This document shows, in pieces, positions 4,161 through 17,833 of a stretch of 64,000 bases of DNA. The stretch is from IMG/VR virus record IMGVR_UViG_3300034158_000023, positions 62,001 through 126,000 of that record; one strand, 5' to 3'. Positions within the stretch are counted from its first letter, which is position 1; each line of letters begins with the position of its first letter. The position numbers and the translations under genes are program-made. Below the pieces are notes generated by a model that was not told where the DNA came from, did not search any database, and saw only the letters and a program-made list of their open reading frames with translations.

Positions 4161-6080
4161 ATGACTACCACAGTACATAAATATTTATTTGCTCCCATTA
4201 ATGCTGCATACACATACAACGACGGTACGTGGATGTTACCTATGGCACTAGCTGTAAAGCTGGTTGCTGATACAGCCAGCGTGAAAAAACCTATTGCGGT
4301 TAGATGTAAAATGCAATGGGTTCTAGATGGCATTCCAGTTGAAAACATAGTAGGTGAAGTTCAATTCGTTATAGAGGACAACTATCTGTATGGCTTAGTT
4401 ACCTTTATGTCGCACTTTGAACACTCTGCTGAAATGCCCCTCCTGCATATGTGCGGCACAAAGAAAAGCTCTGCATTCTACGGTGAGTTGGGTGGTGCCT
4501 GGGAAGATATTGCATTCCTAGAAGCGTTTGGTGATCAAAAGCACGCTACACCTCGGTTTGAATTAGTTTCTCCAGTTGCTGACGCATCTATCGACCTAAC
4601 TGATAGTGAACGTCGTATTTATTGGAGTGATAAAGTAAGCATATACAACCCCCTACAGGAAAAAGGTACTATGCAACAGTATAAAGATTTAGTAGCTAAC
4701 GTTTACAAAAATGGTCGCGTTAAGAGCGACCGTACTGGGACTGGTACTTTAAGTGTATTCGGTGCACAGATGCGTTTTGATTTAACTAAAGGTTTCCCTT
4801 TAAACACTTTAAAGTCAACTCCTTTATATCTGATTGCCAATGAACTGATTTGGTTTTTAAGCGGTTCTACTGATGATCGTGATCTAGCACGAATGGATCG
4901 CATTCACCGTGAAGCTGTTAAAACTTCTAAGGAGCGTGCTAAAGCTGACGAGGTTGGTCAACTTACATTACTACAATATTTCTTCGGTTGTATGCCGAGA
5001 GATGCCTCCGTTGAAACACAGCAACAAACCCTGGCTTGTTTCTATGTGCTCCATCCTCAGTATAACAAACCCCACGTGGAATTAACTTTACGTGTAATCG
5101 GTGCAGTGATTCGCTACCTAGTTAGTTGTGACCTATACGTTTGGTTGTATGAGTTAGCCGACAAGCCTACGATTTGGGATGAGTGGGCTACTTATAACAC
5201 CAACTACTGTCGTGAGCAATTATGTTGGGTAGTTAACCGCGCCGAAAATGCCCCTGATGTACAAGACGAGGTCGATGCTATATTAACCAAGTTTAAAAAT
5301 TGGGAAGGTACGGTTGCTGATAAAAATAAGTGGTTCTATAATGCTGTAGTCGGCATTTCAGATAAATACGCATTTGATGTAGGGGACCTCGTGCATAGAA
5401 GGTCGATTGGACCTATGTACGGGAAACAATGGCGGTCGTTTAGTGATTATGAAGTAGACCAGATCACTAACGCTATTAAGACTTTACGTAGCAATCCTAC
5501 TAGCCGCCGTATCTGTATTTCTGCTTGGGATCCTACGTTGCTACCTATGGACGGTTTTACCCCACATGAAAACGTGGATCGTGGTGATATGGCATTAGCG
5601 CCGTGCCATGCGTTCTTCCAGTTTAACGCAGAAGAGTTAACACGGGAAGAGTTGATGTCTATGGAAAAGGTGCAGTTAGAAACAGCTTACTGTGCCCCTG
5701 AAGCATTGGGTTCTTTTATTGCGGATAAACAACTGCAAGGTAAAATCCCTAAGTATCGTTTAAGTTGCCAAGTTTATTGTCGTAGTCAAGATTTGTTCTT
5801 GGGTACTCCTTTCAACATCGCTTCTTATGCTTTACTGACTCACATGGTAGCCGCTGAAGTAGGTATGGATGTTGGTGATCTTGTATGGACTGGTGGTGAC
5901 GTACACCTGTACTCTAACCACTTAGAACAAGTGCAAGAAATGTTAAGTCGTGACTGTGTAGCATTACCTACTCTGATTTTACATAAAGGGGATAGCGGGT
6001 ACATGGAACTACAATCGACCGACATGGAGTTGATAGGTTACAATCCACATCCTGCAATCTCTGCACCAGTAGCAATCTAA
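4161..6080 (+). CDS. thyA: thymidylate synthase with N-terminal fused domain and large insertions
   Basis: DRTGTGT, ELIWFLSG, GPMYGKQWR, SRR, MALAPCH (catalytic Cys), RSQDLFLGTPFNIASY, HLYSNH motifs; ThyA domain begins at ATG 4671. Confidence 0.95.
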   Translation: MTTTVHKYLFAPINAAYTYNDGTWMLPMALAVKLVADTASVKKPIAVRCKMQWVLDGIPVENIVGEVQFVIEDNYLYGLVTFMSHFEHSAEMPLLHMCGTKKSSAFYGELGGAWEDIAFLEAFGDQKHATPRFELVSPVADASIDLTDSERRIYWSDKVSIYNPLQEKGTMQQYKDLVANVYKNGRVKSDRTGTGTLSVFGAQMRFDLTKGFPLNTLKSTPLYLIANELIWFLSGSTDDRDLARMDRIHREAVKTSKERAKADEVGQLTLLQYFFGCMPRDASVETQQQTLACFYVLHPQYNKPHVELTLRVIGAVIRYLVSCDLYVWLYELADKPTIWDEWATYNTNYCREQLCWVVNRAENAPDVQDEVDAILTKFKNWEGTVADKNKWFYNAVVGISDKYAFDVGDLVHRRSIGPMYGKQWRSFSDYEVDQITNAIKTLRSNPTSRRICISAWDPTLLPMDGFTPHENVDRGDMALAPCHAFFQFNAEELTREELMSMEKVQLETAYCAPEALGSFIADKQLQGKIPKYRLSCQVYCRSQDLFLGTPFNIASYALLTHMVAAEVGMDVGDLVWTGGDVHLYSNHLEQVQEMLSRDCVALPTLILHKGDSGYMELQSTDMELIGYNPHPAISAPVAI

Positions 6081-10590: not shown

Positions 10591-11997
10591 ATGGAAAAGA
10601 CTACCACATTCGTAGAAACGTTTATTGAACAACGTTTAGATTTAGCAGTTGCTGCTAATCCAGATATCACAAATTACCCAATGATGTCGTTACCGCAATT
10701 TATTCAAACTGTGGTTTCGCCTACGGCTACAAACATTGAGTTTAACTTGCGTTTCATGTTCGATGAAAAAGCTGAGTTAAACAGTAAGCGTGGCCAACGC
10801 ACCTTAGACTATTTAGCATCATTAGCGCAAGCTATTATGGGCTTTAGTCATGCACGTGGTGATTTAAGATGGGATAGTCTGGCTGTTACTGAGCACATCA
10901 AAAACACGGCTTGTTCTTTAGGGTTAGTCGAGATGGCTGAAGGTGGGTTTACCTTCGTTACTCGTCAGTACACGGAGGTAGCTAATACATATCTCCAAAA
11001 TCGTAATGACGATACTGCTCGCGCTGTGTTGGTTAGCTTTACTGAGTTAACAGTAGCATGTTTTACTCAACTGGTTAGATTTGCACAATATGCGGAAACC
11101 ACTGGCCGTGAAGATACTTTCCCTGCACCAGTGTATTTTGATCTGGCAGTAGGTAAGGCCAAGTTTAAAACTCTGGGTGAAGTTACCCATCATCAAGCGT
11201 ATGTGAAGTTACTTAAATGCGCCATTGCTGAAACTAGTAAGATTAACTCCATCGCTGGTAAACCACCGTTACCCCCAGTTACTGAGTTAACTCCAGAGGT
11301 CTTAGAAGAAATAACTAAGTTGTCTCTGGTGCAAATACCAATAGTGATTTCAGAAATGAATGAAGCTATCGTTTCCTTAAAAGCTGGTAACGTTAGTCCT
11401 TACAACTTTAGTGGGCTTCGTGACGATGTTCAAGACATCCTATTCACGGCTGCTGGCGGTATGGGTTACATTAACATACCAGGGCTAGAACCTAAACTTT
11501 GTTTTGAGAAGATCTGTAATGATGTTATCGATGTAAACTATTTACACGACGTTGAACGCATCATTTTCTTATTTGAAGCAATGTTAATCGACCTCAATGC
11601 GTTATCTGAAGATTTACCGAAGTGGAATGGTCCTAAGGGACTTGAAGTGTTGTACGGTATCTACTACACGCTGTTTATGGTAACTGCTGAGCTAGGGCGC
11701 TTATACGGCTATAGTGTTAACTCTGATTGGGAGGAAGTGTGTTGCTCTAACTACACTAAGTTTGATAGTGAGTTTGAAGACATCGGTCCTTCATGTAAGA
11801 AGTACATAGACAAAGGTATTGTCATAGTACCTACGTTAAGTCCTTGTGGTGAGTACTATGCGTACATCGTGCCTTACGATCAGTGCGTAGATGGTAAGCA
11901 TTATCCACAGGGTAAGTACCTCAAGTCACATAAGTTCCAAGAGCCAGTGTACAGTCGTCCTAAGATGCGTGCGATTCGTTCTACTATGGTTGGTTAA
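10591..11997 (+). CDS. MazG-like/all-alpha NTP pyrophosphohydrolase
   Basis: SEMNE..LRDDVQDILF, EVCCSNYTKF and GKYLKS..FQEP motifs typical of phage NTP-PPases. Confidence 0.7.
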   Translation: MEKTTTFVETFIEQRLDLAVAANPDITNYPMMSLPQFIQTVVSPTATNIEFNLRFMFDEKAELNSKRGQRTLDYLASLAQAIMGFSHARGDLRWDSLAVTEHIKNTACSLGLVEMAEGGFTFVTRQYTEVANTYLQNRNDDTARAVLVSFTELTVACFTQLVRFAQYAETTGREDTFPAPVYFDLAVGKAKFKTLGEVTHHQAYVKLLKCAIAETSKINSIAGKPPLPPVTELTPEVLEEITKLSLVQIPIVISEMNEAIVSLKAGNVSPYNFSGLRDDVQDILFTAAGGMGYINIPGLEPKLCFEKICNDVIDVNYLHDVERIIFLFEAMLIDLNALSEDLPKWNGPKGLEVLYGIYYTLFMVTAELGRLYGYSVNSDWEEVCCSNYTKFDSEFEDIGPSCKKYIDKGIVIVPTLSPCGEYYAYIVPYDQCVDGKHYPQGKYLKSHKFQEPVYSRPKMRAIRSTMVG

Positions 11998-12044: not shown

Positions 12045-12977
12045 ATGGATACAGTACAAGTAAAGATTGTAAAGATTATAGGTTATGCTAATGGAGTTGT
12101 GAAATTATTAGGAGTGAATGTAAATGAAGGGGGCGTTTCCATACAGTTCAGTTGTGTACCCCTAGCTACCCTGTCTATAGGTGATGTACTTACAGTGCCC
12201 AATCCAATGGAACAAGGTGCTGTGTTGCGCAACACCTTGATAGGTAACCCAGTGGCTATATATACGTTAGAACTTGCGCAGTTGGATCTAATGAGTAGAA
12301 GTACCGAGGGGTTTGATTGGGCGACTGCAACTTTAGCTAAGGAACGCGGAGAAGCTGAAAAGGGGATTGTCTCTTTGGTTATGGATGAATGTCCTTATAA
12401 TACCTTTATTTTAGGCTCTTTTAGTGACCCTGGAATGTGTGTGTCAGAACCAGGCATCTCCCTGGCTAACCCACATAAATTAAGTGCAGTAGCGCCTGTC
12501 AGTGAGGTACGACATCCCTATAGTCTTGGGGTACTTCGCGGCGAGGCTATGGTATTTGGTAAGGGTAATGCTGGTAGTGGTTCCATTCTCAATGACAACG
12601 CTAAAGCAGCTGTTATCCCAGAACCACCAGAAGTTGTCCACGGTTTAAAGGCATACATGGAAGCTTTTGGTATAGTTACCGCAAGACTCATTAAGATCAT
12701 TACAGACGACGTTGATCGTAATGTAACAGCTGCTGACCTGTTAACTTATATTAACTGGGGGACTCAGTTAATACAACAACGGTATAAGGTAGTACTTACC
12801 TCTAATACAATCCCATTTGGTTTGAACTTAATAGGACTTGATACGCTAAGACTACGCATACATGTATTTTTAGCCGATCCAAATGATTCTAATCTAGTGA
12901 GCATCGCCGATGAAATTCAAAAATTCATTGAACGTTTACCTCATGCCGAAGTCACTACACTTTCGAAACAAATCTAG
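12045..12977 (+). CDS. hypothetical protein; N-terminus resembles 13643 and 15229 products
   Basis: 310-aa ORF, SD GGGAG. Confidence 0.8.
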   Translation: MDTVQVKIVKIIGYANGVVKLLGVNVNEGGVSIQFSCVPLATLSIGDVLTVPNPMEQGAVLRNTLIGNPVAIYTLELAQLDLMSRSTEGFDWATATLAKERGEAEKGIVSLVMDECPYNTFILGSFSDPGMCVSEPGISLANPHKLSAVAPVSEVRHPYSLGVLRGEAMVFGKGNAGSGSILNDNAKAAVIPEPPEVVHGLKAYMEAFGIVTARLIKIITDDVDRNVTAADLLTYINWGTQLIQQRYKVVLTSNTIPFGLNLIGLDTLRLRIHVFLADPNDSNLVSIADEIQKFIERLPHAEVTTLSKQI

Positions 12978-13050
12978 CTATATATCACCATAGTGGATAA
13001 ACCCATAAGGGCTAACCGTTTTTACCATTATTATAAAAGGAGTTGTGACA

Positions 13051-13572
13051 ATGTTTAACACGTATAACCATATAGGAACAGTAACCAATATGTTCTTATC
13101 GGAAGCTATTAAAACAGCTCCAGTTAAAGGCATTGATGCTGACCCATTGGTACGTGAGTTATGTGAATGGATTTGTTATGAAACTAAAGGAGTTACAGTA
13201 TTTTCGTGTGAGGGACATGACCGACCTTACTCGGAAGGATATGTCATGATATCTTGGCCAACGATGTTGTCGTGTCCCCTTGTAGTAAGTACATTACAAG
13301 CAGCAATCGATACGCACTTAACCCCGTTGAAAAAGAAGAAACAACTATCTGCTTTCGTGGCTATGGCAGTAGACAATCGTATAGGTACGTCATCGGATTT
13401 CACATTCCGCTTTAAATACAAACACAATGACCGCACCTTTTCTATGCGTGCCATTTGTCGTGTATTGAAACAAGTGATGCAGGATATCGACGCGTTAGAT
13501 AACCCCGTGACTCCGGTAGAGTTAGATGAAGAAGTTGATGTCAATGTGTCTATGTATGACCTAGGTGCATAA
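13051..13572 (+). CDS. hypothetical protein with SCEGH motif
   Basis: ATG 13051 best spaced from AAAAGGAG; TVFSCEGH motif; early-type promoter at 12981. Confidence 0.8.
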   Translation: MFNTYNHIGTVTNMFLSEAIKTAPVKGIDADPLVRELCEWICYETKGVTVFSCEGHDRPYSEGYVMISWPTMLSCPLVVSTLQAAIDTHLTPLKKKKQLSAFVAMAVDNRIGTSSDFTFRFKYKHNDRTFSMRAICRVLKQVMQDIDALDNPVTPVELDEEVDVNVSMYDLGA

Positions 13573-13642
13573 AAGTTAAAAAATATTTCAACCATTAATT
13601 AAATGTAAGACCATCGTTCAATTATAAAAGGGAAAGTTTACT

Positions 13643-13945
13643 ATGTCTAAGAAATTCACTGTATTAAAAATCGCTGGTGTTAAAGGCGGTATGTTGTCTG
13701 TTGATTTAATTGCTCATGAGAAAGTCGGCGTTGAGATCAACGTACTGCTTGCTCCAGATGATGCAATCAAAGAAGGTCTGATCATCACTGGTGATTTAGC
13801 AGAAGGTAAAAAATACTCTGTCAAGTTGAAAGACGGCGAAGCTACCGTTACTGCGATCAAAGGTTATACTGCTGGTAAAGTAGTTAACGCTACAGGCGGC
13901 AATGGTTGCTCACAAAGCAAAGTTACCATGATGGATAACATGTAA
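13643..13945 (+). CDS. small beta-rich protein with C-terminal GxGC tail (cassette 1, gene 1)
   Basis: 100-aa ORF, ATAAAAGGGA leader, own terminator. Confidence 0.85.
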   Translation: MSKKFTVLKIAGVKGGMLSVDLIAHEKVGVEINVLLAPDDAIKEGLIITGDLAEGKKYSVKLKDGEATVTAIKGYTAGKVVNATGGNGCSQSKVTMMDNM

Positions 13946-13960
13946 GCACTCACCACATTA

Positions 13961-13985
13961 GAGAGAGGGTTACCTCTCTCTTTTT
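13961..13985 (+). terminator. intrinsic terminator
   Basis: GAGAGAGG-GTTA-CCTCTCTC plus T tract. Confidence 0.8.
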
Positions 13986-14014
13986 GCGCGTATAATAAAA
14001 TAAAAGGATGACGT

Positions 14015-14551
14015 ATGTCTGTAGTCATATTAGAGAACGGTAAGGTAATGTCTGATAACATAACCTACGTTACTGGCAGACGAACCACTGGCACTAAACA
14101 GTGGAAGAACGACCGACTAGTGATTGCAATGGTTGGTATGATACCAGGTAGAATCCTGGCTAAGAAAATGGTTGACTTCGCAGATGAGTTACTCACTAAG
14201 TATTACAGTGGTGAAGAAGTAAACTTTTTAGACCTGGCTTCAATGATGCCACTCCCTGCTCCTGATATAAAGCGCCACAATCTCCTCATCGTGTTAGGTA
14301 CTCACACTGACGTTTGGGTGATTGAGGTAATTAACGAAAAGGGTAAAATGATACCAACTGTATCAGAGTTAGAAATAGAAGCATTCTTTGCTGATGGTGC
14401 TGGATGCATACATGCTAATTTCATGCATCTCAACGGTATAGATATTGAAAAAGAGTTCCACCGTGCTACAGTCTATGAAATAGAAGTAGGTGGTATTACC
14501 CATGTTACTGATCTACGTGGTTTAGTGCCATTTGAGGGGGCGATATGTTAA
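14015..14551 (+). CDS. Ntn-hydrolase-fold protein with N-terminal Ser (cassette 1, gene 2)
   Basis: SVVILENGKVMSD..K..G..DGAG..VGG parallels 6144 and 15819 products. Confidence 0.6.
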   Translation: MSVVILENGKVMSDNITYVTGRRTTGTKQWKNDRLVIAMVGMIPGRILAKKMVDFADELLTKYYSGEEVNFLDLASMMPLPAPDIKRHNLLIVLGTHTDVWVIEVINEKGKMIPTVSELEIEAFFADGAGCIHANFMHLNGIDIEKEFHRATVYEIEVGGITHVTDLRGLVPFEGAIC

Positions 14552-15186
14552 TTTATAATGGGTACCTTATTACTGGTCACGTGTATCGCCAAATAAGTAA
14601 TGGGATAGCGTACGTTAACAAGACGGGATTAAGTCCCTCTAATGATGGCTTAGCGTTAGGGTTTAAAGCTGCTCTTGGGTACGTACATCCCCGCAACGGT
14701 TTTTCAGCCTCCCAACAACTTGGTTTCAGTAACATTGTAAGTCCAGTTTGTATGTTCCGACAGGTAAATGGTGCAGGTCGAACCACCACCGACATAAACC
14801 CCATATTACATGACGTCATATCTTTTGGTGCATCTAGAGGCAGTTTCCAAGATCTCTTTATGTTGGGGATAGAACTTAAGCTAGACATTCTAGATGTAGT
14901 TAAAACAGCGTACCTGGCGGGGGGAGATATGGTACAAGGTGTTAGCGTATTAGATCTTTTTGCCCATTTTGATAAATACCCTTGTGGGGAAATAGAGGCA
15001 GTTGGTGATGCTACATTTATAGCAAAGCACCAAGAGTTCCTAGCGCAAGTTAAAGCTAACCGTAAAACCTTAGGGTTAGATGTAAGTTGGGGTAATCTTG
15101 ACTCGGAAGGATATGTAATTGATCCTGAAGGCAAGAACCCCAAAGTGGCTGAAAGTAAGCCAAGTAAGAAAGCTCCAAAGCAATAA
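14545..15186 (+). CDS. partner protein, paralogue of 16370 (cassette 1, gene 3)
   Basis: Overlaps upstream stop; shared MLIYNGYLI, IVSPV, LDLFAHFDKYP blocks. Confidence 0.8.
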   Translation: MLIYNGYLITGHVYRQISNGIAYVNKTGLSPSNDGLALGFKAALGYVHPRNGFSASQQLGFSNIVSPVCMFRQVNGAGRTTTDINPILHDVISFGASRGSFQDLFMLGIELKLDILDVVKTAYLAGGDMVQGVSVLDLFAHFDKYPCGEIEAVGDATFIAKHQEFLAQVKANRKTLGLDVSWGNLDSEGYVIDPEGKNPKVAESKPSKKAPKQ

Positions 15187-15228
15187 AACAAACCATCCAA
15201 ACCACCATTAAATAAAAGGGACACTACA

Positions 15229-15750
15229 ATGTCTAAAACTACCATTAGCGCAACAATCGTTACAATCCTTGGTTTTTCATCAGGTGCTTTAACGGCACAA
15301 CTTAATGTCCCTGTCGAAGGTAGCGACGACAGGAAATATGTGGAACTTCAAATTAAGGCTGAACAAGAGTTCTCAGTACCTTTAGATGTAGTAATCGAAG
15401 AACACTTACTTAACAGTGAAGAAGTCTTAATACTGTCAGTCAATGAGTTCGGTACTTACCTATTAGAAACTGAAGCAGACATCGAAGCCCAATTTAAAGC
15501 CGATGATATCGCCATCCGAGAAGCAATGGCTTCATCTGGTGAAGCTGGTGCTCCGGCAACTGAGTCTACTGAAAAACCAGGTCTCTTGGGTAAAGCTGCT
15601 GCTGCCGTAGCAAGTGTCGCTACCGCTGTGGGCATTGGTACTAAAACAGCTGAAGCTAAAACTGAATCCCGCTCTGCGGCTGCTTCTACTGCAACTCCAC
15701 GCCGTGGTCAAGGCTGCGCTTATGCAGAAAAAGCTAAGATCAATTTCTAA
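15229..15750 (+). CDS. protein with Ala-rich linker and C-terminal GxGC tail (cassette 2, gene 1)
   Basis: 173-aa ORF, AAATAAAAGGGA leader, own terminator. Confidence 0.85.
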   Translation: MSKTTISATIVTILGFSSGALTAQLNVPVEGSDDRKYVELQIKAEQEFSVPLDVVIEEHLLNSEEVLILSVNEFGTYLLETEADIEAQFKADDIAIREAMASSGEAGAPATESTEKPGLLGKAAAAVASVATAVGIGTKTAEAKTESRSAAASTATPRRGQGCAYAEKAKINF

Positions 15751-15760
15751 GTCATAAACT

Positions 15761-15790
15761 GTGGGAGAGCTACGGCTCTCCCACTATGCC
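15761..15790 (+). terminator. terminator hairpin followed by TATGCC
   Basis: GTGGGAGAGC-TACG-GCTCTCCCAC. Confidence 0.75.
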
Positions 15791-15818
15791 ATTTACCTAA
15801 AATAAAAGGAATACTGTT

Positions 15819-16373
15819 ATGTCAGTCATTGCACTGCATCAAGGGGTTCTCCATGCTGACTCGTTAGCTCTGGTTGATTGCCACCCACATCAGATACAAA
15901 AGTTATACCAGACCAAACGTGTAGCGTTAGCGCACGTTGGGGAACTGTTAACTAAAGCAGAAGCGGATAAAATTTTAGCATTGTTCACTGATCAGATCCA
16001 ATACACTGGTACTATTGATGCTAAAGCACTGATGGAGACTTTAAATCGTAATCATTACATACACACAGATTTTATCTTGGTTACCCGAGATAAAGCCTTC
16101 CGAGTTAGTTTACACCATCCTGGACCACAGCCATCTGCATTTAATGTGGAAGGTGTACCTATTGGTATGGCTACTAACAATTTAGACGTACACTGTATCG
16201 AACTCTCTCCTATGGCTACCTACATGAATGGCAGCTGTGTGAGTTATTTAAAGGTGGCACTAGAGTTAGGGTATCCAGTAGTGGAAGCAGTTGCTAAAAT
16301 GAAACCATTTACCAGTTTAAATGGTCCTATTACTCATAGCGTGAAGTTATCAGAACTGGAGGCTATAGCATGA
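15819..16373 (+). CDS. Ntn-hydrolase-fold protein with N-terminal Ser (cassette 2, gene 2)
   Basis: SVIALHQGVLHADS..K..G..NGS..ALELG pattern. Confidence 0.6.
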   Translation: MSVIALHQGVLHADSLALVDCHPHQIQKLYQTKRVALAHVGELLTKAEADKILALFTDQIQYTGTIDAKALMETLNRNHYIHTDFILVTRDKAFRVSLHHPGPQPSAFNVEGVPIGMATNNLDVHCIELSPMATYMNGSCVSYLKVALELGYPVVEAVAKMKPFTSLNGPITHSVKLSELEAIA

Positions 16374-17035
16374 TTTTATATAAAGGGTTGTTGATCTACC
16401 CCATTAACTTTTTTAATTCTGGGTATGTTAGAACTAGACCTATCGCGCCAGTTGCTATAACTGAGTATGGTTGTGGTATGGGGATTTCCTACGGGGACAT
16501 TAAGAAACGCCTAGAACCTGTGGCACAGAAACCTAAGCCCGTACCAGATTTGTCCAGTCAGCCTGGTGGACCTACGTCATTTCCCCAACCTAACCCAATG
16601 AATGGAAATGGCGTGCCTGGGGTATATACTCCGTATCGGCATAGAACAGACCGACCAAGCGATATGTGGAACATGACCTTAATTACCAGTCCTGTAACTG
16701 TGCTAGCAATTAACAGTATGTCTAGTGATGGAGTTAAGTCTAGAAATCTTTTTTCTACGTTAGCAGACTTCTGGCATGAAACTGGTTATGAAGTTGAGTA
16801 CAGTTTGGCTTTAGGTGCTGATATAATGGATGCTGTTAAAGTTATCTGGCAGACGGACGAAATTGGTATAGTAGATTTAGTGCCCCACTTCGAACGATAT
16901 CCAACAACGAAAGTTTATTCTCCGTTAAGTGACTATGAACTTAAAATAGAACAAACTCTCATTTTAGACTTGCAACATGATGCCGTTCGAAACAAAATCT
17001 TGGAAGACTACAAAGACAGTGTTAAAATATTTTAA
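16370..17035 (+). CDS. partner protein, paralogue of 14545 (cassette 2, gene 3)
   Basis: ATGA overlap; MILYKGLLI, ITSPV, VDLVPHFERYP. Confidence 0.8.
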   Translation: MILYKGLLIYPINFFNSGYVRTRPIAPVAITEYGCGMGISYGDIKKRLEPVAQKPKPVPDLSSQPGGPTSFPQPNPMNGNGVPGVYTPYRHRTDRPSDMWNMTLITSPVTVLAINSMSSDGVKSRNLFSTLADFWHETGYEVEYSLALGADIMDAVKVIWQTDEIGIVDLVPHFERYPTTKVYSPLSDYELKIEQTLILDLQHDAVRNKILEDYKDSVKIF

Positions 17036-17080
17036 CCAGTAATGAAGTGTGGATCTAATAATAAAAGGAAGTTGTGGGAA

Positions 17081-17188
17081 ATGGAAGAAGAGTCGGCTAA
17101 AACGGAATTTGCGTGTTACGTCCACATGAGTGTGGCGTGCACAATCATTTTAGCATCGTGGTTTTTAATACTCACGGTAGCATTTTAA
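17081..17188 (+). CDS. 35-aa single-TM microprotein (not in ORF track)
   Basis: AATAAAAGGAA leader; MEEESAKTEFACYVHMSVACTIILASWFLILTVAF; fills the gap up to the next leader. Confidence 0.6.
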   Translation: MEEESAKTEFACYVHMSVACTIILASWFLILTVAF

Positions 17189-17206
17189 GAATAAAAGGAG
17201 TTCGGT

Positions 17207-17833
17207 ATGGAAAATTTTAACGAGATGCATAAACTGTTTGCTAAGGTAGCTACAGACTTTCTGCGTTTTTATGGACTAGTAGCTAAAGATGCCGTTGCTA
17301 AGAACTGGGATCCTGAGTTAAGTCTGTTACAAAACATCGACAAAGAAATTAACTCGCATGACTGTGGTTTAGCTGCTTTAGCTATGGCAATTAAATTATA
17401 CCACAGTTCCCCTAAGATAGGACATGAATTCCTAGATATCGGCAACAACGAAAATCATTGGTATATCAGTTGGTGGAATGGTATTGCCGCTGACAATACT
17501 CTATATTGGGATACGTCGGTAGCATTGTTGCCACCTACAGAGAATGCGACCTCCTTACGTGGATATCGAGAAGGGTGTGTGTTAGATGAAGACGACATTG
17601 AAGACGCGACTTACGCCATCTTAAATAACGATGGTTATGGTCAGGCTATTCTATACCAATGGCTGCACTTAAGTTGCCCAGACGTGGAATATGAAACCAC
17701 TGGTGATGACACTACAGATCTAATCAATTTGATACGTGCTATCTTTGATAATCCATTTATGTTCGCTGGTGCGTTTCCTAACTCTGAAAATAACGATTGT
17801 ATCTATAGTAACCGGGATAAGGTAAGAGCGTAA
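17207..17833 (+). CDS. hypothetical protein (HDCG and HWY motifs, possibly papain-like fold)
   Basis: 208-aa ORF, AATAAAAGGAG leader. Confidence 0.8.
   Translation: MENFNEMHKLFAKVATDFLRFYGLVAKDAVAKNWDPELSLLQNIDKEINSHDCGLAALAMAIKLYHSSPKIGHEFLDIGNNENHWYISWWNGIAADNTLYWDTSVALLPPTENATSLRGYREGCVLDEDDIEDATYAILNNDGYGQAILYQWLHLSCPDVEYETTGDDTTDLINLIRAIFDNPFMFAGAFPNSENNDCIYSNRDKVRA

What the first reader, a model, noticed from the sequence alone, without database searches (positions are those of the whole stretch)
13643..17035. Tandemly duplicated three-gene cassette: GxGC-tailed protein plus an Ntn-fold pair
Seen: two copies of the layout [gene 1]-terminator-[gene 2 overlapping gene 3]. Gene 1 products share an N-terminal beta pattern (FTVLKIAGVKGG / ATIVTILGFSSG, also VKIVKIIGYANG in 12045) and end in GNGC+11 aa or GQGC+10 aa after a flexible linker. 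Gene 2 products begin with Ser and keep the D, K, G and GxG/GS positions of proteasome-beta/HslV. Gene 3 products are clear paralogues (MLIYNGYLI/MILYKGLLI, IVSPV/ITSPV, LDILDVVK/ADIMDAVK, DLFAHFDKYP/DLVPHFERYP). They echo the same fold without an N-terminal nucleophile, like an alpha/beta subunit pair. Established: Ser1 proteasome-beta homologues can act as sequence-specific protein ligases (archaeal Connectase). Inference: an undescribed phage protein-processing or conjugation system, each heterodimer acting on its cognate, more abundant GxGC substrate.
Basis: partly seen in the sequence, partly recalled or inferred. Interest (0 to 1): 0.8.

Follow-up and report, generated by a model that had tools for sequence, protein, structure and literature searches.

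The report
Phage proteasome-like enzyme with tailed partner
An uncultured giant phage carries two side-by-side copies of a rare three-gene module: a small protein ending in a conserved Asn/Gln-Gly-Cys motif plus about 11 residues, a probable proteasome-type enzyme with a serine at its start, and a partner protein. This is the first gene-neighbourhood clue to what a phage proteasome relative may act on, but no activity has been shown.

Summary
It is strengthened by a third, very divergent cassette found on another contig (L005).

**Layout.** All three cassettes share the order gene 1, strong hairpin, gene 2, then gene 3 overlapping or abutting gene 2.

**Gene 1.** The products share no detectable sequence similarity. 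Each ends in [N/Q]-G-C plus 10-11 residues, with a chance probability of about 1e-8. In the b lineage this tail is invariant across four genomes while the linker before it gains and loses segments.

**Gene 2.** The products are true paralogues (hhalign E 5e-6). Met-Ser, D14, K28, G41 and G128 are invariant. ESM Atlas models resemble viral proteasome-subunit clusters (TM 0.6-0.76). No sequence method links them to Pfam Proteasome or HslV, and AlphaFold2 failed.

**Gene 3.** The a and b copies are paralogues (E 5.6e-5). Their fold is unresolved, so the "alpha-like subunit" idea is only weakly hinted.

**Tandem origin.** "Tandem duplication" is only partly shown. Cassette a is an accessory unit, lost in two relatives and present in several independent metagenomes.

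**Best reading (about 0.45).** A Ser1 N-terminal-nucleophile enzyme, probably paired with gene 3, acts on the gene 1 tail at or near G|C. Whether it cleaves or ligates is open.

**Rarity.** About 6 contigs among 15 billion proteins, and no cultured phage.

The parts
13643..13945 (+). g1a: 100-aa small beta-rich protein. It has a single Cys (C89) and ends ...TGGNGC + SQSKVTMMDNM.
   Evidence: ORF. It is covered in independent metagenomes X2, X3 and X6, and all four listed substitutions are synonymous.
13901..13942 (+). Tail motif of g1a: N87-G88-C89 plus 11 residues.
13960..13985 (+). Hairpin plus U-run after g1a (intrinsic-terminator-like).
   Evidence: One search gives -16.9 kcal/mol, z -4.7.
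14015..14551 (+). g2a: 178-aa putative Ser1 N-terminal-nucleophile (proteasome-like) enzyme.
   Evidence: The ESM Atlas model has pTM 0.84 and TM 0.61-0.76 to viral proteasome-like clusters. Invariant M1 S2 D14 K28 G41 G128. Paralogy to g2b/g2c at E 5e-6.
14545..15186 (+). g3a: 213-aa partner protein of unresolved fold, translationally coupled to g2a (7-nt overlap).
   Evidence: hhalign against the g3b family gives E 5.6e-5. AlphaFold2 failed. Its 3' end survives as a remnant in L002.
15229..15750 (+). g1b: 173-aa protein with an N-terminal domain (about residues 1-106), an indel-prone Ala/Ser/Thr-rich linker and an invariant tail ...ATPRRGQGC + AYAEKAKINF.
   Evidence: Alignment A3 of four genomes. 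The last 24 residues have dN about 0 with dS 0.26-0.43.
15709..15747 (+). Tail motif of g1b: Q161-G162-C163 plus 10 residues.
15761..15784 (+). Hairpin after g1b (10-bp GC-rich stem), followed by UAUGCC and no U-run.
   Evidence: One search gives -21.7 kcal/mol, z -5.8. A compensatory base-pair change occurs in L004.
15819..16373 (+). g2b: 184-aa putative Ser1 Ntn (proteasome-like) enzyme.
   Evidence: ESM Atlas pTM 0.77, TM 0.61-0.73 to viral proteasome-like clusters. dN/dS 0.09-0.23 across four genomes.
16370..17035 (+). g3b: 221-aa partner protein with a variable Pro/Gly-rich insert. It overlaps g2b by ATGA.
   Evidence: Homologues P0002, P0003 and P0004 at 91%, 71% and 65% identity. dN/dS 0.2-0.27.

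Best explanation
Each cassette is a self-contained enzyme-plus-client module of a phiKZ-like jumbo phage. Gene 2 encodes a very divergent proteasome/HslV-type N-terminal-nucleophile enzyme. Its catalytic Ser becomes residue 1 once host methionine aminopeptidase removes the initiator Met. It is co-translated with gene 3 and probably works as a complex with it. Gene 1 is made in excess, because it has its own start signal and a hairpin after it. It presents a conserved C-terminal tail on a flexible linker, and the enzyme acts on that tail at or next to the Gly-Cys bond. The enzyme either clips off the last 11-12 residues (maturation) or, less likely, uses them as a leaving group to transfer the gene 1 body to another amine, as Connectase does. 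Shown: the layout, the conservation, the purifying selection, the tail motif, and the invariant Ser/Asp/Lys/Gly pattern with a predicted Ntn-like fold. Inferred: the g2-g3 complex, the excess of gene 1, the tail being the site of action, and the position of the scissile bond.
For: The linkage g1-hairpin-g2-g3 recurs in three cassette types whose g2 proteins share only 21-25% identity. An exhaustive HMMER search of 1.84 billion representatives found only these g2 proteins, so the association is complete across the known family. [N/Q]-G-C plus 10-11 residues occurs in all three g1 types and in no other real ORF of the window. The g1b tail is invariant (dN about 0, dS up to 0.43), while the linker carries independent 17- and 27-residue deletions. 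Cassette a is gained or lost as exactly one unit in L003. g2 has invariant M-S start, D14, K28, G41 and G128, and an SGG-like motif near G159. ESM Atlas structure matches go to viral 'proteasome subunit' clusters and other Ntn folds such as IMP cyclohydrolase and TANGO2. The secondary-structure order of the low-confidence AlphaFold2 model is four strands, two helices, four strands, two helices, two strands, as in proteasome beta. Connectase shows that a Ser1/Thr1 proteasome homologue can be specific for one motif and needs about 10-13 residues C-terminal of the scissile bond (PMC7980362). Gly at P1 matches the conserved Gly-1 of proteasome propeptide cleavage (own knowledge).
Against: No biochemical data exist. 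No sequence method links g2 to Proteasome, HslV or any PDB chain (hhalign against an HslV alignment gives E 0.23). AlphaFold2 gave pLDDT 44.7 and the PDB fold search was meaningless. The fold therefore rests on one language-model predictor plus motif positions. The g3 fold is unknown. Nothing shows that the tail is cleaved rather than merely bound. Hairpins b and c lack a U-run, so 'terminator' and 'gene 1 in excess' are inference.
Confidence: 0.45

Rival explanations
1. Gene 1 is not a substrate but a cap, adaptor or regulator. It docks onto a g2/g3 proteasome-like particle through its flexible C-terminal tail, by analogy with the HbYX or GQYL tails of proteasome activators. The real substrates are other phage or host proteins.
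For: The tail sits on a flexible linker of variable length. The tail length after Cys is constant (10-11 residues), and all three tails end in a polar residue followed by a hydrophobic one (NM, NF, TF). The three-way linkage fits a complex as well as it fits an enzyme-substrate pair.
Against: The most conserved element, [N/Q]GC, lies 11-12 residues from the C-terminus, whereas known docking motifs use the terminal carboxylate (own knowledge). A hairpin after gene 1 implies unequal dosage, which is typical of precursor-enzyme operons. The g1 N-domains are unrelated in sequence, which is odd for a conserved cap.
Confidence: 0.2
2. The tail of gene 1 is handled by something other than gene 2. Candidates are the downstream papain-like or C39-like candidate ORF 17207-17833 (cleavage of the double-glycine-leader type) or a host enzyme acting on the Cys. 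In this reading g2/g3 have another, unrelated role.
For: ORF 17207 carries HDCGLAALAMAIKLY and a later NHWYI...YWDTS. These weakly match the Cys and His regions of C39 peptidases in two libraries (Pfam E 0.07; TIGR01193 E 0.31).
Against: The matches are below any threshold, and no PDB relative was found. The L002 homologue lacks the Cys and His, yet L002 keeps an intact b cassette with an identical tail. L005 has an unrelated gene downstream of g3c. P2 is Asn/Gln, not the Gly/Ala/Ser of double-glycine sites (own knowledge). The g1-g2-g3 linkage is strict, whereas linkage to ORF 17207 is not.
Confidence: 0.1
3. Gene 2 is not a catalytically active Ntn hydrolase. It may have another alpha-beta-beta-alpha sandwich fold (for example PP2C-like) or be a non-enzymatic scaffold. 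The module would then be a set of co-inherited proteins of unknown, non-proteolytic function.
For: There is no significant sequence link to any Ntn family. The g2b Atlas list also contains PP2C phosphatases at TM 0.51-0.60. AlphaFold2 gave no confident model.
Against: The best structural neighbours of both g2a and g2b are small viral proteasome-like clusters (TM up to 0.76/0.81). The residues invariant across three cassette types are exactly those expected of the proteasome family, starting with Ser directly after Met. g2 is 40-100 residues shorter than PP2C domains and lacks their Asp-rich metal motifs, as seen directly in the sequence.
Confidence: 0.15

Closest known systems
Phage and bacterial proteasome homologues PPH / AAH / CPH (Fuchs, Alva, Lupas 2021, PMC8665760)
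   Same: Small, propeptide-free proteasome-like proteins encoded by tailed phages, with the Thr1/Ser1, Asp17, Lys33 and Gly47 pattern. ESM Atlas places g2a and g2b next to viral clusters named proteasome subunit, 141-162 aa.
   Different: g2 is 178-184 aa. It is not linked to those families by any sequence search run here. That paper reports no informative genomic context for its families, whereas g2 is strictly linked to a tailed gene 1 and a coupled gene 3.
HslV / 20S proteasome beta subunit (peptidase family T1)
   Same: The inferred N-terminal nucleophile, the Asp/Lys/Gly positions, the GSG-like and SGG-like motifs, and the secondary-structure order.
   Different: Ser replaces Thr as nucleophile. 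There is no AAA+ partner gene nearby. No significant sequence match was found. Ring assembly is unknown.
Archaeal Connectase (PMC7980362)
   Same: A proteasome homologue with Ser1 (M. jannaschii) or Thr1 that acts on one specific motif in a dedicated protein. It requires about 10-13 residues C-terminal of the scissile bond. The g1 tail would leave 11-12 residues after a G|C cut.
   Different: There is no sequence similarity (PDB profile search). The motif is [N/Q]GC, not KDPGA. Connectase is monomeric and lacks helices H1/H2, whereas g2 has a coupled partner gene and predicted helices at that position. Ligation is purely hypothetical here.
20S proteasome alpha/beta pairing
   Same: An active subunit gene is followed by a co-translated, similar-sized protein that starts M-[IL]-[LI]-Y and so has no small residue to expose as nucleophile. 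There is weak local similarity of g3 to the GSG/H3-H4 region of g2.
   Different: Homology of g3 to g2 is not established (E 0.002-0.03, with an ambiguous register in BLASTP). The g3 fold is unresolved.
Precursor-plus-protease operons of ribosomal peptides (long Nif11/NHLP-type leaders with Gly-Gly sites)
   Same: The precursor gene comes first and is followed by a hairpin, the processing genes lie downstream, and a Gly-containing site precedes a short C-terminal peptide.
   Different: The enzyme class is different (Ntn-like, not C39). P2 is Asn/Gln. The 'leader' is a folded 75-105-aa domain. No modification or export genes are present.

Membership tests
Proteasome-like Ntn hydrolases (T1: proteasome beta, HslV, PPH etc.) | Thr or Ser nucleophile at the mature N-terminus | tested here: met
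   All six g2 sequences, covering three cassette types, start Met-Ser. Ser at P1' allows Met removal (established MetAP rule, own knowledge). The upstream ATGs in L002 and L004 lie before the conserved AATAAAAGG start signal and are absent from the window and L003.
Proteasome-like Ntn hydrolases (T1: proteasome beta, HslV, PPH etc.) | Asp17, Lys33 and Gly47 equivalents and a GSG-type loop at conserved spacing | tested here: met
   D14, K28, G41 and G128 are invariant across 21-25%-identical sequences. hhalign against an HslV alignment is not significant (E 0.23), but it places K28 on K33, G41 on G45 and G128 on the GSG loop.
Proteasome-like Ntn hydrolases (T1: proteasome beta, HslV, PPH etc.) | Four-layer alpha-beta-beta-alpha Ntn fold | tested here: inconclusive
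   ESM Atlas models (pTM 0.84 and 0.77) match viral proteasome-subunit clusters, IMP cyclohydrolase and TANGO2 at TM 0.6-0.76. AlphaFold2 with six sequences gave pLDDT 44.7, and Foldseek against PDB gave nothing meaningful.
Proteasome-like Ntn hydrolases (T1: proteasome beta, HslV, PPH etc.) | Significant sequence match to family models (Pfam PF00227) or solved members | tested here: not met
   No hit in Pfam, PHROGs or NCBIfam, in PDB by phmmer or hmmsearch, or by hhalign to HslV.
Proteasome-like Ntn hydrolases (T1: proteasome beta, HslV, PPH etc.) | Peptide-bond hydrolysis dependent on residue 1 | not testable with these tools
   This needs expression and a Ser2Ala mutant.
Connectase-type protein ligase | Sequence or structure membership in the Connectase (DUF2121) family, monomeric and lacking helices H1/H2 | tested here: not met
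   The PDB profile search finds no Connectase chain, and there is no Pfam hit. g2 has a predicted long helix pair at residues 46-87 (low confidence) and a coupled partner gene.
Connectase-type protein ligase | KDPGA recognition motif in the client protein | tested here: not met
   The g1 tails carry [N/Q]GC, with no KDPGA.
Connectase-type protein ligase | Reversible transpeptidation via an N-terminal amide intermediate | not testable with these tools
   A biochemical assay is required.
Proteasome alpha-like inactive partner (gene 3) | Same Ntn fold as the active subunit, without an N-terminal nucleophile | tested here: inconclusive
   There is no small residue after Met. hhalign of g2 family against g3 family gives E 0.012, g2 family against g3c gives E 0.0021, and HMMER gives E 0.033, all local only. 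AlphaFold2 gave pLDDT 36.6, and the Atlas had no model.
Double-glycine leader / C39 peptidase processing | C39 peptidase domain with catalytic Cys and His, and a Gly-Gly/Ala/Ser site at P2-P1 | tested here: not met
   ORF 17207 matches only the Cys motif, below threshold, and is degenerate in L002. P2 of the g1 site is Asn or Gln.

The most novel reading that the evidence does not exclude
The module is a phage-encoded, ATP-independent protein-tagging system. The Ser1 Ntn enzyme, with its gene 3 partner, uses the last 11-12 residues of gene 1 as a leaving group and ligates the gene 1 body through its new C-terminal Gly to phage or host proteins. This would be a Connectase- or sortase-like functional analogue of ubiquitin-type conjugation, with two orthogonal enzyme-tag pairs in one genome.
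Probability: 0.12. Interest if true: 0.9.

Novelty: new variant of a known kind. Interest (0 to 1): 0.62.

Why it matters
Phage proteasome homologues have been catalogued, but their describers found no genomic context that suggested a function (PMC8665760).

This module gives one branch of that superfamily a concrete, testable client: a co-inherited protein with a short, sharply conserved C-terminal motif. The genome also offers two naturally diverged enzyme-client pairs, with a third on another contig, for cognate-versus-swapped tests.

If the enzyme cleaves, it is a new type of dedicated maturation protease in jumbo phages. If it ligates, it would be a second natural Ntn-type protein ligase and a possible source of orthogonal ligation tools.

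The family is very rare and is known only from metagenomes, which limits its general biological weight.

Tried and rejected
**Searches that found no relatives**
- Megablast and tblastn of the region and of g2a, g3a, g2b, g2c and ORF 12045 against GenBank phages gave no match.
- Pfam, PHROGs, NCBIfam and PADLOC on all cassette proteins gave nothing.
- The word-indexed search of 5.8 billion proteins with g2a, and later with the g2 alignment, returned only the sequences themselves.
- IMG/VR, JGI metagenome and GTDB genome scans returned only the source contig.

**Structure prediction**
- AlphaFold2 of g3a (pLDDT 36.6) and g2a (pLDDT 44.7) failed for lack of alignment depth.
- The Foldseek PDB search of the g2a model was meaningless, so no PDB-level closest structure can be named.

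**Homology tests**
- hhalign of the g2 family against E. coli HslV alone mis-registered. Against a five-sequence HslV alignment it was non-significant, though correctly registered.
- Gene 1 homology was tested by BLASTP and hhalign in all combinations, including ORF 12045. None was found.

**Ideas considered and set aside**
- A split-intein or Hint reading of the G|C junction, with the 11-12-residue tail as a short N-intein piece. g3 shows no TxxH or terminal HN[CST] blocks, and g2 looks Ntn-like.
- A lipobox or CAAX reading of the Cys. The position in the protein is wrong for either.
- A third cassette elsewhere in the window. HMM scans of all ORFs found none.


Full report
**What the window is.** The window lies on IMG/VR contig IMGVR_UViG_3300034158_000023, which is 215 kb. 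It encodes phiKZ gp29PR, DUF7193 and the divergent family-B DNA polymerase typical of phiKZ-like jumbo phages. The polymerase is under 40% identical to those of Erwinia and Burkholderia jumbo phages. No GenBank phage shares DNA with the region. The cassettes sit among nucleotide-metabolism and replication genes: thyA, a MazG-like gene and an NAD-dependent ligase.

**Check of the observation.**
- The six ORFs are exactly as described.
- g2 and g3 overlap by 7 nt in cassette a and by ATGA in cassette b.
- Each gene 1 is followed by a strong hairpin: -16.9 kcal/mol (z -4.7) and -21.7 kcal/mol (z -5.8).
- Only hairpin a has a U-run. Hairpin b keeps its pairing through a U-A to C-G change in L004.
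- g1a, g2a, g1b and g2b each have an (A)ATAAAAGG element about 10 nt before the ATG. g3a and g3b do not. This fits translational coupling of g3 to g2.

**Paralogy.**
- g2a against a profile of the g2b family plus g2c gives hhalign Prob 86%, E 5e-6 over 159 columns. HMMER gives E 7.5e-5, the top non-member hit among all ORFs.
- g3a against the g3b family gives Prob 66%, E 5.6e-5 over 80 columns, and HMMER E 3.8e-4.
- g1a against g1b shows no similarity by BLASTP or hhalign. The likeness to the ORF 12045 N-terminus is not significant (E 0.3).
- The duplicated unit is therefore demonstrable for genes 2 and 3. For gene 1 only the architecture is shared.

**Relatives elsewhere.**
- g3b has close homologues on three contigs: L002 at 91%, L004 at 71% and L003 at 65% identity. 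All three carry g1b-g2b-g3b in the same order.
- An exhaustive HMMER search of 1.84 billion representatives with g2a+g2b found only g2a, g2b and one further protein, P0006 (E 1.6e-4, full length).
- P0006 lies on a 3.8-kb contig, L005, inside a third cassette. Its parts are g1c (94 aa, ending ...KTGTQGC+ADGKRSTIETF), a hairpin of -20.4 kcal/mol (z -6.0), g2c (178 aa), and g3c (183 aa) starting 2 nt after the g2c stop.
- Every known member of the g2 family therefore sits in the same three-gene layout.

**The gene 1 tail.**
- Aligned on the Cys, the tails read GGNGC-SQSKVTMMDNM, RGQGC-AYAEKAKINF and GTQGC-ADGKRSTIETF.
- The shared core is [N/Q]-G-C, followed by a small residue, then 10-11 residues ending in polar-then-hydrophobic.
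- Among + strand ORFs of at least 90 aa in the window, [NQ]GC occurs three times, two of them in these tails. The chance of two further proteins having it at 10-11 residues from the end is about 1.3e-8.
- In the b lineage the last 24 residues have dN about 0 at dS 0.26-0.43. The linker shows independent 17- and 27-residue deletions.
- The Cys is the only one in g1a, in g1c and in the window's g1b.

**Selection and population data.**
- dN/dS is 0.09-0.23 for g2b, 0.20-0.27 for g3b and 0.32-0.38 for g1b.
- Cassette a is absent from L002 and L003. L002 keeps the last 76 nt of g3a, which shows a deletion. L003 lacks exactly window positions ~13651-15211, with breakpoints in the similar start regions of g1a and g1b.
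- Cassette a is no assembly artefact. Contigs from independent biofilm, freshwater and other metagenomes cover g1a and g2a, and one contig spans g2a, g3a and g1b. The four listed substitutions in g1a are all synonymous.
- g2a, g2b and g2c are about equally distant at 21-25% identity. An old in-situ duplication and stacking of separately acquired cassettes therefore cannot be told apart.

**What gene 2 is.**
- No profile library or PDB sequence search gives a hit.
- The ESM Atlas holds both sequences with confident models (pTM 0.84 and 0.77). Their nearest neighbours by features and by structure are small, mostly viral clusters named proteasome subunit or carrying PF00227 in part of their members (TM 0.61-0.76). 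IMP cyclohydrolase and TANGO2, both Ntn folds, follow. g2b also lists PP2C at lower TM.
- Across the three cassette types the invariant residues are M1, S2, D14, K28, A38, G41, D73, T96, G128, G141, G159 and H163.
- With spacings 12/14/13 against 16/16/12 in HslV, these correspond to Thr1, Asp17, Lys33 and Gly45/47, plus the GSG loop. g2c also has TSGG where proteasomes have S169-G170 (read directly from the sequence, plus own knowledge of the family).
- hhalign against a five-sequence HslV alignment is not significant (E 0.23). Its register still puts K28 on K33, G41 on G45 and G128 on GSG.
- AlphaFold2 with six sequences failed (pLDDT 44.7). Its secondary-structure order matches proteasome beta. 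The PDB fold search was uninformative.
- I put the probability that g2 is a proteasome-type Ntn protein at about 0.8.

**What gene 3 is.**
- It is unresolved. AlphaFold2 gave pLDDT 36.6, and the Atlas has no model.
- Local similarity to g2 around the GSG/H3-H4 region is suggestive: E 0.012 profile against profile, E 0.0021 for g3c, and HMMER E 0.033 as the best non-g2 hit.
- BLASTP of g2c against g3c picks a different register.
- g3c is not detectably similar to g3a or g3b. It is a positional analogue only.

**Mechanism.**
- The strict three-way linkage, the loss of a whole cassette as one unit, the invariant tail on an indel-tolerant linker, and a hairpin after gene 1 together point to an enzyme-client module.
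- In this reading the Ser1 enzyme, probably with gene 3, acts on the gene 1 tail.
- Gly at P1 matches the Gly-1 requirement of proteasome propeptide cleavage (own knowledge).
- The 11-12 residues after the putative cut match the primed-side length that Connectase needs (PMC7980362).
- Hydrolysis versus transfer cannot be decided. I give hydrolysis about twice the weight of ligation.
- Rivals are: a docking-tail cap model, processing by another enzyme (the C39-like ORF 17207), and a non-catalytic g2.

**Comparison with the literature.**
- Fuchs, Alva and Lupas (PMC8665760) described phage-borne proteasome homologues: PPH (about 140 aa), AAH and CPH. They state that they found no genomic context or co-occurrence suggestive of function.
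- Full-text searches found no later work on these proteins, and no paper linking a phage Ntn protein to a tailed partner.
- g2 is a new, very divergent branch of a known superfamily. The module around it appears undescribed.

**Verdict.**
- Observation: confirmed.
- Interpretation: partly supported.
- Novelty: new variant of a known kind.
- Interest: 0.62.

Noticed in passing
window, 19 sites, e.g. 13999-14007, 15211-15219, 15801-15809, 17060-17068, 17190-17198; also L005:1839-1848: AATAAAAGG occurs 19 times against 0.86 expected, 18 of them on the + strand, about 8-12 nt before start codons. It looks like a shared start signal or promoter-proximal signal for one class of genes. The same element precedes g1c in the distant contig L005.
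   Followed up: partly
window 17207-17833 (+); L003:8800-9435; L002:9310-9843: This 208-aa ORF has HDCGLAALAMAIKLY and NHWYI...YWDTS, resembling the Cys and His/Asp regions of C39-type papain-like peptidases. The matches are sub-threshold (Pfam E 0.07, TIGR01193 E 0.31, phrog_6870 E 2e-5). The L002 homologue has lost the Cys and His.
   Followed up: partly
window 15761-15784 and L005:2157-2184: The hairpins after g1b and g1c have no U-run and are followed by UAUGC. This may be a phage-specific terminator, or a terminator-promoter junction of the phiKZ-type transcription system (TATG late-promoter motif, from memory).
   Followed up: no
window 4161-6080 (+); L005:244-1355: The thymidylate synthase ORF is 639 aa, with the ThyA domain only in residues 338-639 and matched in two stretches. 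In L005 a thyA 3' fragment directly follows a GIY-YIG/NUMOD3 homing-endonuclease gene, which suggests an intron- or endonuclease-interrupted thyA.
   Followed up: no
window 12045-13572 compared with L002:6576-6911 and L003:4843-6882: This is a region of frequent rearrangement. L002 has precise deletions of window 12092-12919 and 13045-15110. L003 has the 468-aa MazG-like gene (window 10591-11997) shortened to 198 aa. L002 and L003 carry a GNAT acetyltransferase gene that the window lacks at about 18150.
   Followed up: partly
window 17082-17188 (+): This is a small ORF (35 aa from the ATG after the AATAAAAGG element) with a hydrophobic C-terminal half. A 35-aa gene is also called at the corresponding position in L002 (8711-8818), so it may be a small membrane protein.
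   Followed up: no
window 14577-15245 (-): A 222-aa antisense ORF covers g3a. It has no support and is probably spurious. Its N-terminal part persists in L002 only because the 3' end of g3a is retained there.
   Followed up: no
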